Assembly: GCF_001194135.2 (NCBI RefSeq)
Contig: NC_068987.1
Span: 9,152,469 to 9,194,222 of the forward strand
From: Octopus bimaculoides
Taxonomy: Eukaryota
Length of the DNA stretch: 41,754 nt
Direction of reading: 5' to 3'
The notes under the pieces are model-generated. The model was given only the letters and a program-made list of their open reading frames with translations, made no database searches and was not told the origin of the DNA. How positions within the stretch are numbered: position 1 is the stretch's first letter; every line of letters begins with the position of its first letter. This document shows, piece by piece, positions 4,881 to 26,677 of this stretch. Position numbers and translations under genes: made by a program.

Positions 4881-5555
4881 GTTACACTATTATTTATATT
4901 ATTTATACTATTATTTGATTGAACGCCACGCATCCATTTCCAAGTAAGTTCATCTTATACATACATACATACATATACAGGCGCACACGCACATAGATAC
5001 ACACCCACCCACTGCACATTACGAAATCCTCTTAAAATTTCGTTCATTCACTTTTCCGGGCTTGTTCTCGATTCTGACTCAATCACTCCCGCGGAAGTTA
5101 GACCATTATTATTGCCAATTTTCTGCGAAATATACTGGAAGGTAAAGAGTTTCTCTCCAACTCCACTCTCGGTGTGAAACTAGACTCAACTATAAAACGT
5201 TGGAAAGGACAAAAACCTCGTTCTTAGTACATTCACTCTCATCCACACTACAACATCCGTCATTGTAGCCATCAGTCATTGGTAAATTGTATGCCTCCGC
5301 ATTGTCAATGGGAACAGATCGAATCACATGCATATGCCCAACATCCGGATTGCCTTTTTTCTCGCTAATAGCTATTCATCATAATTCCATCGTTCAAGTG
5401 TGTGTTGGAAGGTATAGTATACATTGATTCTTAGATGTGATTGTGTCAGGGAAACTAATCCGAAACTAGCAATACATTCCTCAGAAGTATTGCCGGGCCA
5501 AAAATTGCATGGGTCATTTTACAGGGTTTTTTTAGGTCAATATTTACTTGGAATT

Positions 5556-5769
5556 AAGGTGGTGAGCTGGCAGAAACGTTAGCACGCCGGGCGAAATGCT
5601 TAGCGGTATTTCGTCTGCCGTTACGTTCTGAGTTCATATTCCGCCGAGGTCGACTTTGCCTTTCATCCTTTCGGGGTCGATAAATTAACTACCAGTTGCG
5701 TAATGGGGTCGATCTAATCGACTGGCCCCCTCCCCAAAAATTTCGGGCCTTGTGCCTAGAGGAGAAAAG
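5556..5769 (+). mobile_element. tRNA-derived SINE family A, full-length (copy A1)
   Basis: A box tggcagaaacg, B box gagttcatattcc, body gtcgactttgcctttcatcctttcggggtcgataaatt; flanked by 17-bp repeats at 5539-5555 and 5770-5786. Confidence 0.9.
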
Positions 5770-5786
5770 AATATTTACTTCGAATT

Positions 5787-6017
5787 AAGGCGGCGAGCTG
5801 GCAGAAACGTTAGCACGCCGGGCGAATTGCTGAGCGGTATTTCGTCTGCCACTACGTTCTTAGTTCAAATTCCGCCGAGGTCGACTTTACCATTCATCCT
5901 TTCGGGGTCGATTAAATAAGTATCAATTACGCACTGGGGTCGATGTAATCGACTTAATCCCTTTGTCTGTCCTTGTTTGTCCTCTCAGCCTCCGCCCCTG
6001 TGGGCAATAAAGAAATA
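5787..6017 (+). mobile_element. SINE family A with variant tail (copy A2)
   Basis: Same head and body as A1; tail ttaatccctttgtctgtccttgtttgtcc...tgtgggcaataaagaaata is shared with 13491-13570. Confidence 0.9.
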
Positions 6018-6152
6018 AATATTTACTTCGAATTCTTTCTCACTTTTTTCTGTTGTAACTCCTAGCCGTTATCTGAGATACATTAACTCGCTAGCCATTT
6101 TCGCCATGCTGGAAGTAGCTCCCATTATTATTATTATTATTTTTAATAATGA

Positions 6153-6378
6153 TAAGCTGGCGAGCTGGAAGAATCGTTAGCACGCCCGGTAAAATACTTT
6201 GCAGTATCTCATCCGTCTTTACGTTCTGAGTTCAAATTCCTCCGAAGTCGACTTTGCCTTTCATACTTTCAGGGATCGACAAATTAAGTACCAGTGAAAC
6301 ACTGGAGTCGTTGTAATCTACTAGTCCCCTCCCCACAAATTTCAGGCCTTATACTTTTAGTAGAAAGGATTATTATTA
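6153..6378 (+). mobile_element. SINE family A (copy A3)
   Basis: ggcgagctggaagaatcgttagcacg...gagttcaaattcc...ggccttatacttttagtagaaagg. Confidence 0.88.
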
Positions 6379-6399
6379 ACAATGATAATCGTTTCTATG

Positions 6400-6655
6400 A
6401 TAGGAACAAAGGTTGAAATTTGGTGGGAGGAGGCTGGTCGATTACATCGGTCCCAGGGTTCAACCGGTACTCGTTTCTTCGACCCTGAAAGGATGAAAGG
6501 CAAAGTTGACTTCGGTGGAATTTGAACTCAGAACGTAGGCAAATTTGAACTCAGAACGTAGGCAAATTTGAACTCAGAGTGTAGAGAGCCGGAGGAATGT
6601 TGCTCAGCATTTTGTCCGGCGTGTTAACGATGCGGCCTGCTCGCCGCTTCCCAAT
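6400..6655 (-). mobile_element. SINE family A (copy A4) with internal 23-bp triplication
   Basis: Reverse complement of the A consensus; the unit aatttgaactcagaacgtaggca repeats at 6519, 6542 and 6565. Confidence 0.85.
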
Positions 6656-6951
6656 GAAGTAATTAGGGTAAAAATCTGTAGTACCCAAATAGAAACCCGA
6701 CGAGTAATATACATCCCTTTTAAGCGCATCCTCTTTGATGCTCCAAGTATGTCCAAGGGACATCATTGTTCTAACCATTTACCATCTGTCTGCAGAAAAT
6801 AAGATTGACAGACTACCAATGACATCTACCCAACTGCTAGAGTGCTATGAGAACCTGATAACACTCCAGATGCAAGCTCCCATGCTCGTTTTACGCTTGG
6901 TTTATGACAGCAGTGAAATACTCAAGCAGTAAGAAAGTATGTCTATCAAAT

Positions 6952-7166
6952 AATTTCTCTCCTATAGGCACAAGGCCTGAAATTTTGGGGGAGGAAACTA
7001 ATTGATTATATCGACCCCAGTGTTTCACTGGTACTTAATGTATCGACCCCGAAAGGTTGACAGGCGAAGTCGATCTCGGCGGAATTTCAACTCAGAACGT
7101 AGCGACGGGCGAAATACTGCTAAGCATTTCGTCCAGCGTGCTAACGGTTCTGCCAGCTCACCACCT
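6952..7166 (-). mobile_element. SINE family A (copy A5) with 14-bp TSD
   Basis: Full reverse-strand copy; flanks tatgtctatcaaat (6938-6951) and tatatctatcaaat (7167-7180). Confidence 0.9.
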
Positions 7167-7180
7167 TATATCTATCAAAT

Positions 7181-7396
7181 GATGATTTCAAATTTTGCCA
7201 CAAGGGCAGCTTGGGGGAAGTGGGGATGAGTCGATTACTTCGACCCAGTGTTCAACTGGTACTTATTTCATCGACTCCTAAAGGATGAAAGATAAAGTCG
7301 ACCTCGGCGGAATTTGAACTCAGAACGTAGCGACGGGCGATATACCGCTAAGCATTTCGTCCAGCGTGTTAACAATTCTGCCAGCTCGCCGCCTTA
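7181..7396 (-). mobile_element. SINE family A (copy A6)
   Basis: ggcggaatttgaactcagaacgtag...gccagctcgccgcctt, followed by (TAA)n. Confidence 0.9.

Positions 7397-7434
<38 letters not shown>
7397..7434. repeat. (TAA)n microsatellite running into gap
   Basis: Direct reading. Confidence 0.9.
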
Positions 7435-9306: not shown

Positions 9307-9359
9307 ATAGATCATATCAGCTGGGACCCTCGTCGTCGACGTAACCGTCGGAGTGCTCC
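9307..9359 (+). mobile_element. Extreme 3' fragment of the SINE C/D tail
   Basis: gatcatatcagctgggaccctcgtcgtcgacgtaaccgtcggagtgc resembles gatcggatcaactggaaacctcgtcgtcgtaaccgacgaagtgcc at ~17800-17845. Confidence 0.65.
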
Positions 9360-10704: not shown

Positions 10705-11016
10705 TTGCTGTAGTTTCAGCTCAGAGCTGCGGCCATGCAGATGCACCGCCGTTTTGCTACACTTTTATTACTGAAATCCTCCTCCAATATGTGGCACTTG
10801 GTGAAGAATGGAGTTTGATGTAGCAACCCTCATTTGCACCTCTTGCCGTGAGGTAGGTTCATCTGGGACTCTCGACAGGAAAAGGTCCAGCTTTGATTTA
10901 AAAACGCCTACATCTACTTTGTGCAGGTTCATCAGGCTCTTTGGGAGAATATTGAAAAGCTGTGGACCCCTGAAACCCAGGCTGTTGCAGTAACTGGTCC
11001 TGAAACGCGATGATTT
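10703..11016 (-). mobile_element. 5'-truncated CR1/L2-group LINE: ORF2 C-terminus plus 3' UTR
   Basis: Open frame 11016->10768 encodes KSSRFRTSYCNSLGFRGPQLFNILPKSLMNLHKVDVGVFKSKLDLFLSRVPDEPTSRQEVQMRVATSNSILHQVPHIGGGFQ*. The GPxLFNxLP...FKxxLDxFLxxVPDEP...SNS pattern is typical of the post-RT C-terminus of CR1/L2-group LINEs (from recall); followed by a short UTR and (TA)n. Confidence 0.85.
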
Positions 11017-11393
11017 ATATATAATTCTTCAACAAGAATAGTATTGACAGTGACTTCGAGGACTCGGCCAGCTAAGCCTTCATAGAACTCAACTGACCAA
11101 AACTTCGATGCCACTGTCATTACAAATTTTGTTAAATAATAAATTTGTATTTCCACAAATTTATGTAGTAGGGTGTACTGTGTTTACTTAGATCAGTGAT
11201 AAGTGAACCAGTGAAAAACGAGGATAGTTAAAACTGCTAATCTTTATACACAAATTAAAAGGCTTTATTTTTAGAGCCACAGTTTCCCCACATATTCCAC
11301 AATGGTGGGCGTAGGTGTGGCTGAGTTGTGAAGAACCTTGCTTCTTCCCAACCATGGTGTCTCAGTCCTATTGCGCGGTGATTTCTACTATAG

Positions 11394-24776: not shown

Positions 24777-25236
24777 NNNNNNNNNNNNNNNNNNNNNNNN
24801 NNNNNNNNNNNNNNNNNNNNNNNNNNNNNNNNNNNNNNNNNNNNNNNNNNNNNNNNNNNNNNNNNNNNNNNNNNNNNNNNNNNNNNNNNNNNNNNNNNNN
24901 NNNNNNNNNNNNNNNNNNNNNNNNNNNNNNNNNNNNNNNNNNNNNNNNNNNNNNNNNNNNNNNNNNNNNNNNNNNNNNNNNNNNNNNNNNNNNNNNNNNN
25001 NNNNNNNNNNNNNNNNNNNNNNNNNNNNNNNNNNNNNNNNNNNNNNNNNNNNNNNNNNNNNNNNNNNNNNNNNNNNNNNNNNNNNNNNNNNNNNNNNNNN
25101 NNNNNNNNNNNNNNNNNNNNNNNNNNNNNNNNNNNNNNNNNNNNNNNNNNNNNNNNNNNNNNNNNNNNNNNNNNNNNNNNNNNNNNNNNNNNNNNNNNNN
25201 NNNNNNNNNNNNNNNNNNNNNNNNNNNNNNCTACAT

Positions 25237-25345
25237 CAATGGTTCTCAACTGGGGTTCACATGGCCCTTAGGGGGTCCATATAAGATTTTGATATTAAAC
25301 TTTATGAGCAATAAATTGCTTATACTTCTACGATACACAACGACC
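25237..25345 (+). mobile_element. hAT-type MITE left end, truncated
   Basis: caatggttctcaactggggttcacatgg...ggtccatataagattttg...aaactttatgagcaataaattgcttatacttctacgatacacaa is homologous to 11394-11510. Confidence 0.75.
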
Positions 25346-25462
25346 GAAATTTTTTTTTGGGGGGGGGGACCAGTCGATTCGATCGACCTCAGTACGCAAC
25401 TGGTACTTAATTTATCGACCTCGAAAGGATGAAAGGCAAAGTCGACCTCGGCGGAATTTGAA
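25345..25462 (-). mobile_element. SINE family A, truncated at the B box
   Basis: ggaccagtcgattcgatcgacc...cgaaaggatgaaaggcaaagtcgacctcggcggaatttgaac, then stops. Confidence 0.88.
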
Positions 25463-25474
25463 CAATATGGCTGC

Positions 25475-25887
25475 TGAAGTAGTTGTATGCTGTCAACTTA
25501 ATGTGACAGTCCCCTGAAGGGAATAATACTACTATTGGTTAGACCTAGGAAGCTGCACCGCTTCCTGTCGGCCTTGACACATTTCCTGTGTCATTATGTT
25601 TACGATGTGGGAGACAAGCACCTCTACCCAGCTAAGCCTGCATCCAGAGATATGTTTCTGAGTCTTTCTGAGTATTTCTGAAGCTGATGACGAGAAAAGA
25701 CTCAGAAACATGTCTCTGGATGCAGGCTTAGCTGGGTGGAGGTGCTTGTCTCCCCCTTGTAAACATAAGGCCACAGGAAATGTGTCAAGGCCGACAGGAA
25801 GCGGTGCAGCTTCCTAGGTCTAACCAACAGTAGTATTATTCCCTTCAGGGGACTGTCACACTAAGTTGAGAGCATACAACTACTTCA
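25475..25887. repeat. Long near-perfect inverted repeat (fold-back): arms 25475-25667 and 25696-25887, 28-nt loop
   Basis: Arms aligned by eye: about 10 differences in ~193 bp, from tgaagtagttgtatgc...gagtcttt to aaagactc...gcatacaactacttca. Confidence 0.97.
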
Positions 25888-26091
25888 TCGTATCACTACT
25901 GCATAAATCTCTCTGGGAGATTTAGAAATGTATTATTTCTAAATATGGCTGCTGAGTCAAGGAACCAACTGGAAATTATGTTACTTTTATCATAAGTGAA
26001 TTTGAAAATTGGAAAAAAACCGAAACAACAGACTCAACTTTAAAATTTGGGGATAACATCATTAGTAGGATATTTGATTAGCAAAAATCAT

Positions 26092-26305
26092 ATGATGAGC
26101 TAGCAGAATCGTTAGCACGTCGGACTATATACACAACAACATTTCCTCCGACTTATTTTTACATTCTGAATCCAATTCTGCCAACCTCTGCTTTGTCTTT
26201 CTTCCTTTCCAGGTCGATTTTATAAAGTACCAGTCAAGTACTAGAATCAATGCAATCAACGTAACCCCGTCCCTAAGATTCATAGCCTTGCGCCAAAATT
26301 TATTA
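26092..26305 (+). mobile_element. SINE family A, strongly diverged
   Basis: gatgagctagcagaatcgttagcacgtcgg...tttccaggtcgattttataaagtaccag...ccttgcgcc. Confidence 0.65.
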
Positions 26306-26677
26306 CTTGTCGATGCACAGAGGGGGAAAAAGACAGATACCATTTTAGGGATCAAAAACTGTGCTATTTACGGATTTTCAAGGACACTATTTTAGGATTT
26401 GTAATGGCCACTTGAACTACTTGTAGCAATGTCAAGAGTTCTTTTTTACTAACAGTTTGCTGTCGATGTGTAAGCCAAGGTGCAGATACAGTGTATGTAT
26501 GTTATATATGACGTATATAATATATAAATTATACATATATGCATACACAAACACATGAATGTATTATATGGGTGTGTGTGTGCATTTTCTGTGCATGTGC
26601 GTGCGTACGGACGCCTGTGTGTGTGTGTGTGTGTGTGTGTGTATGAATTATGTATGTACATGCGAGCTTTTGTGTGT

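What the first reader, a model, noticed from the sequence alone, without database searches (positions are those of the whole stretch)
25475..25887. 413-bp near-perfect fold-back of otherwise unique sequence: candidate hairpin-RNA (endo-siRNA/ADAR) locus or novel foldback element
Seen: arms 25475-25667 and 25696-25887 are reverse complements with about 10 differences and a 28-nt loop. The arm sequence matches none of the SINE, MITE or LINE families here. The ends (tgaagtag...ctacttca) have no TA, TTAA or 8-bp TSD. On a + transcript the mismatches include two A-C pairs (25501/25861 and 25534/25828) and several G-U wobbles. Established: long near-perfect palindromes are unstable and usually purged; Drosophila hpRNA loci of this architecture produce endo-siRNAs; A-C mismatches are favoured ADAR sites. 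Inference: a recent inverted duplication, a member of an undescribed foldback TE family, or a long-hairpin RNA gene silencing a cognate sequence. A weak hint of a target is the right-arm frame KHKATGNVSRPTGSG, which loosely resembles Tc1/mariner N-terminal TGxVxRxxGSG motifs, and a decayed maT-like transposase lies 5 kb away.
Basis: partly seen in the sequence, partly recalled or inferred. Interest (0 to 1): 0.75.

Follow-up and report, generated by a model that had tools for sequence, protein, structure and literature searches.

The report
Head-to-head retroelement insertion in octopus DNA
The 413-bp fold-back is real, but together with a 54-base one-sided extension it lies between two copies of a 14-base target duplication, which marks it as one old retrotransposon-type insertion (most like a truncated Penelope-like element) and not a purpose-built hairpin-RNA gene.

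Summary
Arms 25475-25667 and 25696-25887 are reverse complements with 9 mismatches, 1 indel and a 28-nt spacer, and the arm sequence is unique in the window. It brackets the fold-back plus a 54-nt extension found only beyond the right arm (25888-25941). This anatomy matches published descriptions of Penelope-like element (PLE) insertions: two 5'-truncated copies placed head-to-head, a one-sided 3' "tail", and a target-site duplication around the whole unit. PLEs prime reverse transcription on both target strands from two start sites. The host is an octopod-like cephalopod, and PLEs are abundant in octopus genomes. Against membership, there is no hammerhead ribozyme, no coding similarity, and no second copy could be reached because no cephalopod DNA collection was searchable. 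The arms differ by 4.7%, so the insertion is old (roughly 7 My), not recent. Nothing supports the Tc1/mariner hint. Hairpin-RNA or ADAR activity remains an untested possible by-product. Best reading: a dead PLE-type insertion (confidence 0.45), or at least a retro-type insertion flanked by a target-site duplication (about 0.7). Interest is low.

The parts
25464..25477 (.). Left copy of the 14-bp direct repeat AATATGGCTGCTGA, the putative target-site duplication. Its last 3 nt (TGA) also pair as the first 3 nt of the left arm, so the boundary is uncertain by up to 3 nt.
   Evidence: Exact match. Significance (0 of 3000 shuffles; 1.1% of random window placements).
25475..25667 (-). Left arm. This is the inverted, 5'-truncated copy (sense strand is minus, outer end is the 3' end). 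It lacks the 54-nt tail.
   Evidence: 193 nt, 95% complementary to the right arm.
25655..25684 (+). 10-nt unit TTTCTGAGTN repeated about 3 times at the centre. The first unit is the inner end of the left arm, and the other two make up most of the 'loop'.
   Evidence: TRF (25655-25681, period 10, 2.7 copies); sequence.
25668..25695 (.). 28-nt spacer between the arms. It consists of about 17 nt of slipped 10-mer copies followed by TGATGACGAGA.
25696..25887 (+). Right arm. This is the direct 5'-truncated copy (sense strand is plus).
25888..25941 (+). One-sided 54-nt extension ('tail') beyond the right arm. It contains two small stem-loops, AAATCTC/GAGATTT and TTTAGAAAT/ATTTCTAAA (the last 2 nt of the second stem lie in the right TSD copy). 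It has no counterpart beyond the left arm.
   Evidence: Sequence; the mini-hairpins appear in the fold; it has no other copy in the window.
25942..25955 (.). Right copy of the 14-bp direct repeat AATATGGCTGCTGA.
25231..25463 (-). Context, not part of the element. This is a 5'-truncated copy of the abundant tRNA-derived SINE, ending exactly at the left TSD copy. Other copies continue with TCAGAACGTAG... at this point.

Best explanation
The fold-back is the body of a single, old, dead retrotransposition-type insertion of about 464 bp (25478-25941). It consists of two 5'-truncated copies of the same roughly 200-250-nt 3'-terminal sequence joined head-to-head. The right copy carries a 54-nt terminal extension that the left copy lacks, and the whole unit is flanked by a 14-bp target-site duplication. 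This is the insertion architecture described for endonuclease-containing Penelope-like elements (PLEs). The proposed mechanism is as follows. The PLE enzyme cuts both target strands a few to about 14 bp apart. Each 3' end primes reverse transcription of element RNA. Priming starts at one of two nearby internal sites, so one copy ends 54 nt further out than the other (the 'tail'). Both cDNAs stop early and are joined at their 5'-truncated ends, and gap repair produces the TSD. Later the central 10-mer slipped into about 3 copies, and the arms accumulated 4.7% differences. Directly shown here: the inverted repeat, the one-sided tail, the flanking 14-bp repeat, the central slippage, and the absence of coding capacity. 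Inferred: that the repeat is a TSD, that the enzyme was a PLE reverse transcriptase/GIY-YIG endonuclease, and the order of events. Any double-stranded RNA made when the locus is transcribed would be a by-product.
For: (1) The arms are 95% complementary, and the differences rule out chance.
(2) An exact 14-bp direct repeat brackets the fold-back plus tail. It was reached in 0 of 3000 flank shuffles and 1.1% of random window placements. A length of 14 bp fits target-primed insertions; to my knowledge it exceeds the TSD of any DNA-transposon superfamily.
(3) There is a one-sided 54-nt extension at the outer (3') end of one arm only.
(4) The literature describes this anatomy for PLEs. [quoted passage not shown]
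(5) PMC3846280 describes inverted pLTRs of 181-218 bp, a 31-bp tail at the 3' end of one inverted pLTR, TSDs of 8-10 bp around the whole insert, and head-to-head as the commonest arrangement.
(6) PMC11167929 shows that the enzyme cleaves and extends both strands, and that the tail equals the stretch between two reverse-transcription start sites.
(7) PMC4209133 reports paired motifs 100-700 bp apart on opposite strands and attributes most of the motifs it found, largely single ones, to truncated PLEs.
(8) The host is an octopod-like cephalopod. PLEs form one of the six TE orders annotated in Octopus vulgaris, with 30 recently active Penelope families (PMC13282606).
Against: No hammerhead ribozyme is present. 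Rfam shows none even at E <= 10, and a relaxed min-HHR descriptor finds none on either strand. Canonical EN+ PLEs carry one in the pLTR, although Naiad and most Chlamys PLEs do not (PMC8557442). The tail is 54 nt, longer than the usual 30-40. The TSD is 14 bp, compared with 8-10 bp in the rotifer examples. All sense frames are closed and have no Pfam or protein-database relatives, so nothing links the arms to a PLE ORF. Only one copy is known. No cephalopod genome could be searched at the DNA level, so family membership rests on architecture alone. The 14-mer was found after the fact, and its left copy overlaps the arm by 3 nt.
Confidence: 0.45

Rival explanations
1. The insertion was made by a LINE reverse transcriptase (target-primed reverse transcription of a LINE 3' end, SINE or other RNA). 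The inverted copy arose by twin priming or by snap-back self-priming of the first cDNA strand.
For: A 14-bp TSD is typical of LINE-mediated insertion. An inverted copy lacking the last 54 nt is what internal priming by the second strand would give. LINEs (RTE, CR1, Dong-R4, L1-Tx1) and hundreds of SINE families are active in octopus (PMC13282606). A LINE ORF2 fragment lies in the window. The two small stem-loops in the tail resemble 3' recognition hairpins of stringent-type LINEs (own knowledge).
Against: In classical twin priming the inverted and direct segments are adjacent, non-overlapping parts of the RNA (own knowledge: Ostertag & Kazazian 2001). Here both are the same 192 nt. There is no poly(A) or microsatellite 3' tail. 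The arm and tail show no similarity to any SINE or LINE piece in the window. PMC8557442 states that inverted repeats plus a tail are not seen in non-LTR TPRT.
Confidence: 0.2
2. A local inverted duplication arose by fold-back priming or replication template switching, and the 14-bp flanking repeat is coincidental or a by-product of microhomology-mediated repair.
For: The arm sequence is unique in the window. The centre shows slippage-type 10-mer repeats. No family member was found anywhere.
Against: An inverted duplication yields inverted flanks, not direct ones. The 14-mer is non-repetitive and was reached in 0 of 3000 shuffles. The negative searches are uninformative, because the searchable collections hold almost no host DNA (control).
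Confidence: 0.08
3. It is a member of a fold-back or MITE-type DNA transposon family with 193-bp terminal inverted repeats.
For: It has long, near-perfect inverted repeats with a short spacer. TIR elements, including Tc1-Mariner, are recently active in octopus (PMC13282606).
Against: No TSD abuts the arm ends: the flanks are GGCTGC and TCGTAT. The only flanking repeat is 14 bp, lies 54 nt outside the right arm, and is longer than any DNA-transposon TSD. There is no second copy in 41.7 kb of repeat-rich sequence. There is no transposase-related frame.
Confidence: 0.07
4. It is a selected hairpin-RNA locus. It would be transcribed and processed into endo-siRNAs that silence a cognate sequence, or kept as an ADAR substrate or sponge.
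For: A 193-bp near-perfect duplex would form on either strand. Cephalopods edit RNA heavily (own knowledge). Rotifer Penelope copies with inverted structure yield small RNAs whose polarity switches between halves (PMC3846280).
Against: No target was found in the window or in the protein collections. No RNA family matched above threshold; there were only generic sub-threshold miRNA-hairpin hits. The mismatches show no compensatory or A-to-G pattern. The window contains many other inverted SINE pairs able to form dsRNA, so this one is not special. The TSD and tail show that the structure was born by transposition, not by duplication of a target gene.
Confidence: 0.05
5. It is an assembly artefact: a chimeric fold-back join in a short-read draft assembly.
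For: The window is a gapped draft with 10 N runs, one only 245 bp upstream. PLE-type inverted structures are known to trouble short-read assemblies (PMC8557442).
Against: The arms differ at 10 positions. A fold-back chimera of one template would give identical arms. Both junctions, the tail and both TSD copies lie in one continuous 4969-bp contig piece (25231-30199).
Confidence: 0.05

Closest known systems
Penelope-like element insertions with an inverted pLTR and 'tail' (e.g. Pen2a_Av of Adineta vaga; Naiad, Penelope and Poseidon elements)
   Same: Two copies lie head-to-head with variable 5' truncation. The arms are about 190 bp, compared with pLTRs of 181-218 bp. A short extension is present at the 3' end of only one of the inverted copies. 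A TSD encloses the entire unit. The structure has a palindromic, slippage-prone centre.
   Different: There is no internal ORF and no direct pLTR; only the two terminal fragments are present. There is no hammerhead ribozyme. The tail is 54 nt, not 30-40. The TSD is 14 bp, not 8-10. No sequence link to any PLE could be tested.
L1 and other LINE 5'-inversions by twin priming
   Same: There is a TSD of LINE-like length. The structure has an inverted 5' part and a direct 3' part. The inverted part lacks the extreme 3' end.
   Different: In twin priming the two parts are different, adjacent stretches of the RNA. Here they are the same stretch, forming a true palindrome. There is no poly(A) tail.
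Drosophila hpRNA loci (endo-siRNA hairpins)
   Same: Both have a long, near-perfect inverted repeat with a short loop, able to form a duplex of about 190 bp.
   Different: hpRNAs arise by inverted duplication of a target gene and have identifiable targets and Dicer-2-dependent siRNAs. Here there is a TSD-flanked insertion, no target, and no expression data.
Foldback (FB) elements and MITEs
   Same: Both show long inverted repeats making up nearly the whole element.
   Different: Those elements have TSDs of 2-11 bp directly abutting the inverted repeats and occur in many copies. Here the arm ends have no TSD, and the flanking repeat is 14 bp and asymmetric.

Membership tests
Penelope-like element (PLE) insertion | An inverted 5'-truncated copy lies adjacent to a direct copy (head-to-head inverted repeat). 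| tested here: met
   The arms 25475-25667 and 25696-25887 are 95% complementary, and their inner ends are the truncation points. The feature definition comes from PMC8557442 and PMC3846280.
Penelope-like element (PLE) insertion | An optional short extension ('tail', usually 30-40 bp) is present at the 3' end of only one of the inverted copies. | tested here: met
   A 54-nt extension (25888-25941) lies beyond the right arm only and inside the flanking duplication. It is longer than the published 30-40 bp.
Penelope-like element (PLE) insertion | A target-site duplication encloses the whole complex unit. | tested here: met
   An exact 14-bp repeat lies at 25464-25477 and 25942-25955. It was reached in 0 of 3000 shuffles. 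Published examples are 8-10 bp.
Penelope-like element (PLE) insertion | A hammerhead ribozyme motif lies in the pLTR. This holds for canonical EN+ clades and is absent in Naiad and most Chlamys. | tested here: not met
   Rfam gave no hammerhead hit at E <= 10. A relaxed min-HHR descriptor gave no hit on either strand. CUGAUGA...GAAAC..GUC at 25684-25714 lacks helix I and a proper helix II.
Penelope-like element (PLE) insertion | Sequence continuity with an element encoding a PLE-type RT and a GIY-YIG endonuclease. | not testable with these tools
   No cephalopod genome is searchable by DNA. Within the element, no frame matches Pfam or the protein collection. A simple motif search found no reverse-transcriptase-like context (one stop-interrupted YVDD match near 9343) and no GIY-YIG motif in the window.
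Fold-back / MITE DNA transposon | Terminal inverted repeats are directly flanked by a short (2-11 bp) TSD. | tested here: not met
   The arm ends are flanked by GGCTGC and TCGTAT. The only direct repeat is 14 bp and lies 54 nt beyond the right arm.
Fold-back / MITE DNA transposon | Multiple dispersed copies. | tested here: inconclusive
   There is no second copy in the 41.7-kb window.
LINE twin-priming inversion | The inverted and direct segments are adjacent, essentially non-overlapping parts of the source RNA, with a 3' poly(A) or simple-repeat tail. | tested here: not met
   Both segments are the same 192-193 nt, and there is no A-rich or microsatellite tail at 25941.
hpRNA (endo-siRNA hairpin gene) | The arms are homologous to a target gene elsewhere. 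| tested here: inconclusive
   There is no homologue in the window or among 5.8 billion proteins. The genome itself could not be searched.
hpRNA (endo-siRNA hairpin gene) | Transcription and Dicer-dependent 21-23-nt small RNAs. | not testable with these tools
   No RNA data are available.
microRNA precursor (Rfam sub-threshold hits MIR6020, mir-61, mir-147) | Score at or above the family's gathering threshold. | tested here: not met
   The scores were 49 bits against 118, 36 against 77 and 28 against 57. These are generic hairpin matches centred on the loop. Nothing reached gathering threshold.

The most novel reading that the evidence does not exclude
A retroelement-born 193-bp hairpin, created in one step by PLE-type double-strand priming, is transcribed in octopus tissue. 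It has been co-opted as an endo-siRNA precursor that silences its own PLE family, or as a dedicated ADAR substrate. That would make PLE insertions a ready-made source of hpRNA genes in cephalopods.
Probability: 0.05. Interest if true: 0.6.

Novelty: new member of a known kind. Interest (0 to 1): 0.2.

Why it matters
Mainly as a caution and an annotation aid. Tight near-perfect fold-backs in invertebrate genomes can be created in a single step by retroelements that prime on both target strands, so they should not be read as hairpin-RNA genes or as recent palindromic duplications without checking for an asymmetric tail and a TSD. If the PLE assignment holds, this copy would give the two 3' end points (25887 and 25941 equivalents), and therefore the two reverse-transcription start sites, of an octopus PLE or PLE-dependent non-autonomous family. 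Such insertions also add to the pool of dsRNA-forming structures available to ADAR and RNAi in cephalopods. This window already holds many inverted SINE pairs, so this locus is not exceptional in that respect.

Tried and rejected
- **Protein searches of the arms.** I searched the 93-aa ORF spanning the loop, and all three sense frames of spacer + right arm + tail, against 5.8 billion proteins. There were no hits. The arms are therefore non-coding, and I found no annotated target.
- **Pfam on all six frames at E <= 10.** The only hit was a spurious, sub-threshold FliG_C match. I rejected the Tc1/mariner HTH hint.
- **Rfam.** Nothing reached gathering threshold. At E <= 10 there were only generic miRNA-hairpin matches far below threshold, and no tRNA or hammerhead hit. 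ARAGORN found no tRNA. A tRNA-SINE head in the arm, which I suspected by eye (TAGCTGGGTGG resembles an A box), is not supported.
- **Hammerhead ribozyme.** CUGAUGA at 25684-25690 followed by GAAAC-AU-GUC looked promising. It fails helix I and the closing pair of helix II, lies partly in a slipped 10-mer, and is not found by a relaxed descriptor. Rejected.
- **Exact-pattern DNA scans with arm 24-33-mers.** I scanned viral, metagenome and prokaryote contigs and got 0 hits. A control with the host's most abundant SINE core found a single metagenome contig from some other invertebrate, so these negatives say nothing about copy number.
- **Search of 20 kb of Octopus vulgaris DNA plus two small loci for the arm.** Only chance-level matches.
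- **Literature search for the SINE core sequence.** No paper found.
I did not pursue it, as it is peripheral.

Full report
**Observation.**
Arm 25475-25667 (193 nt) and arm 25696-25887 (192 nt) align as reverse complements with 9 mismatches and one single-base indel (extra G at 25604). They are separated by 28 nt. On a plus-strand transcript there are two G-U wobbles (25625/25738 and 25651/25712), not several. The remaining differences are G-G, U-C, A-G, U-U and U-C. Folded as RNA, 25464-25956 gives -376.6 kcal/mol against -139 +/- 6 for dinucleotide shuffles (z = -37). The minus strand gives -365.5 (z = -35). A sensitive blastn (word size 7) of 25231-26400 against the whole window finds the self-inverted match and SINE copies in the flanks, but no other copy of the arm, spacer or right-hand flank up to 26056.

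An exact 14-bp direct repeat, AATATGGCTGCTGA, lies at 25464-25477 and 25942-25955. It does not abut both arms. On the left it runs into the arm, sharing its last three bases. On the right it lies 54 nt beyond the arm. I took the 105-nt stretches at each end of the palindrome. A common substring of 14 nt was never reached in 3000 shuffles of those flanks. It was reached in 1.1% of random placements of the same geometry in this window. I did not inspect those placements, but suspect they are mostly simple or interspersed repeats. The 14-mer itself is not low-complexity. The bounded unit is therefore: 14-mer, left arm, spacer, right arm, 54-nt extension (25888-25941), 14-mer. The extension has two small stem-loops (AAATCTC/GAGATTT and TTTAGAAAT/ATTTCTAAA), visible in the fold. 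It has no counterpart outside the left arm.

**Centre of the palindrome.**
The inner end of the left arm and most of the 'loop' consist of a 10-nt unit, TTTCTGAGTN, present about three times (TRF: 25655-25681, period 10, 2.7 copies). The right arm has the complement only once. Roughly 17 of the 28 spacer bases therefore look like slippage, either at the joint or afterwards.

**Surroundings and host.**
The window is a gapped draft assembly with ten N runs. It is full of microsatellites and copies of one tRNA-derived SINE. The sequence immediately left of the 14-mer (25231-25463, minus orientation) is a 5'-truncated copy of that SINE. In ten other copies the consensus continues with TCAGAACGTAG... 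where this copy meets the 14-mer. Another copy lies inverted at about 26057-26302.

A LINE ORF2 C-terminal fragment at 10771-11028 (minus) matches a 'Hypothetical predicted protein [Octopus vulgaris]' at 59% identity. It also matches an ORF on a contig of assembly GCA_024449705.1 at 66% identity. A 20-kb O. vulgaris locus shares several of the window's repeat families at 75-88% identity. The host is therefore an octopod-like cephalopod. I could not determine the exact species.

**Search for relatives of the arm.**
- None was found among 5.8 billion proteins, using either the 93-aa ORF across the loop or all three sense frames of spacer + arm + tail.
- Pfam on six frames gave nothing relevant at E <= 10.
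- Rfam gave nothing at gathering threshold and only generic, far sub-threshold miRNA-hairpin matches at E <= 10.
- ARAGORN found no tRNA.
- Exact 24-33-mers from the arm were absent from viral, metagenome and prokaryote contig collections.
- A control with the 23-mer core of the host's most abundant SINE found one metagenome contig only. That contig carries a different SINE sharing the core.

The DNA negatives therefore carry no information about copy number in the host genome. No tool here can search a cephalopod genome by DNA.

**Interpretation.**
A direct repeat around an inverted structure is what an insertion leaves, not what a local inverted duplication leaves. Its 14-bp length fits target-primed reverse transcription. 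To my knowledge it exceeds the TSD of any DNA-transposon superfamily. The arm ends themselves have no TSD (flanks GGCTGC and TCGTAT). The remaining question is which retro-type process makes a true palindrome with a one-sided terminal extension.

The published description of Penelope-like elements matches point by point:
[quoted passage not shown] In Adineta vaga the inverted pLTRs are 181-218 bp. [quoted passage not shown] The whole insert is flanked by 8-10-bp TSDs, and head-to-head is the commonest arrangement (PMC3846280). Biochemistry of an Anolis PLE shows that the protein cleaves and extends both target strands. It also shows that reverse transcription starts at two nearby internal sites, and that the stretch between them is the genomic 'tail' (PMC11167929). 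In Schistosoma, paired PLE ribozyme motifs 100-700 bp apart on opposite strands were also noted, and most of the motifs found there, largely single ones, were attributed to truncated PLEs (PMC4209133). PLEs form one of the six TE orders annotated in Octopus vulgaris, with 30 Penelope families showing recent insertions (PMC13282606).

On this model the element here is a pair of very short (193 nt and 220-274 nt) 5'-truncated copies primed from the two strands. The equivalents of 25887 and 25941 would be the two start sites.

**Evidence against PLE membership.**
- Canonical EN+ PLEs have a hammerhead ribozyme in the pLTR. I found CUGAUGA at 25684-25690 followed by GAAAC-AU-GUC, but helix I does not form and helix II is 3 bp closed by a C-A mismatch. 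Part of the motif lies in a slipped 10-mer. Neither Rfam nor a relaxed min-HHR descriptor reports a ribozyme. Naiad and most Chlamys PLEs also lack one, so this lowers the assignment but does not exclude it.
- The tail (54 nt) and TSD (14 bp) are longer than the published examples.
- All sense frames are closed in both arms, so the source was non-coding at its 3' end or non-autonomous.
- Only one copy is known.

I therefore put the PLE reading at 0.45 and the broader statement 'single retro-type insertion with a TSD' at about 0.7.

**Rivals.**
- LINE-mediated insertion with twin priming or snap-back synthesis (0.2) explains the TSD and the missing end of the inverted copy. However, classical twin priming joins different, adjacent RNA segments, and there is no 3' A-rich or simple-repeat tail.
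- A local inverted duplication with a coincidental 14-mer (0.08) conflicts.
- A fold-back or MITE DNA transposon (0.07) fails the TSD test.
- An assembly fold-back (0.05) should give identical arms, not ten differences. Both junctions lie in one 4969-bp contig piece.
- A selected hpRNA or ADAR locus (0.05) is not exclusive of a TE origin. It has no support here: no target, no conservation data, and no A-to-G or compensatory pattern (4 transitions against 5 transversions). The window also has many other inverted SINE pairs of 100-214 nt at 76-85% complementarity that could form dsRNA.

**Age.**
If the arms were identical at birth, the 4.7% difference (JC 0.048) means about 2.4% per arm. I used the octopus TE clock implied by PMC13282606 (JC 0.065 at 18 My and 0.09 at 25 My). 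This gives about 7 My. This is an inference that ignores gene conversion. The duplication is not recent.

**Verdict.**
This is a real, statistically unambiguous fold-back. Its most likely nature is ordinary: a dead, truncated, head-to-head retroelement insertion of the Penelope-like type in an octopod genome. It is probably a new (or at least unidentified here) member of a known kind. The hairpin-RNA idea remains an untested possible by-product. Interest is low (0.2).

Noticed in passing
window 5555-7397: A dense cluster of at least eight copies of the same tRNA-derived SINE in both orientations. They form long imperfect inverted repeats (e.g. 5555-5768 with 6955-7168, 214 nt, 85% complementary). 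If transcribed, these are potential dsRNA/ADAR substrates and are more typical of this genome than the fold-back.
   Followed up: partly
window 25404-25448; locus L001 6537-6588: The SINE core GTCGACTTTGCCTTTCATCCTTTCGAGGTCGATAAA is shared at 96% identity with a different tRNA-headed SINE on a marine metagenome contig (Ga0066187_1002493). This suggests a SINE core domain conserved beyond this host, similar to a MetaSINE-type core (from memory, not tested).
   Followed up: partly
window 10771-11028 (minus): A LINE ORF2 C-terminal fragment (...LFNILPKSL...FKSKLDLFLSRVPDEP...). It is 59% identical to an Octopus vulgaris hypothetical protein (P0002, chromosome OX597824.1) and 66% identical to an ORF on a 746-bp contig of GCA_024449705.1. 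This is the basis for calling the host an octopod-like cephalopod.
   Followed up: partly
window 25350-25369: A run of T10 immediately followed by G10 inside the truncated SINE copy, 245 bp from an N gap at most. It could be a real homopolymer pair or a sequencing or assembly oddity.
   Followed up: no
window 25684-25714: CUGAUGA-CGAGAAAAGACUCA-GAAAC-AU-GUC resembles a hammerhead catalytic core at the joint of the two arms, and an AUG overlaps the GUC. It fails helix I and helix II and is not detected by Rfam or by a descriptor search. It is probably chance, partly created by 10-mer slippage.
   Followed up: yes
window 25591-25608: Five of the ten arm differences (including the indel) cluster within 18 nt (TGTCATTATGTTTACGATGTGGG against TGGCCTTATGTTTAC-AAGGGGG). 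This suggests one complex mutational event and not independent substitutions.
   Followed up: no
whole window: There are ten N runs (10-705 bp) and pervasive (TG)n, (ATGT)n, (TATG)n-type microsatellites. Many listed ORFs are translated microsatellites. Among ORFs of at least 55 aa, I recognised no ordinary protein-coding sequence by eye apart from the LINE fragment.
   Followed up: partly
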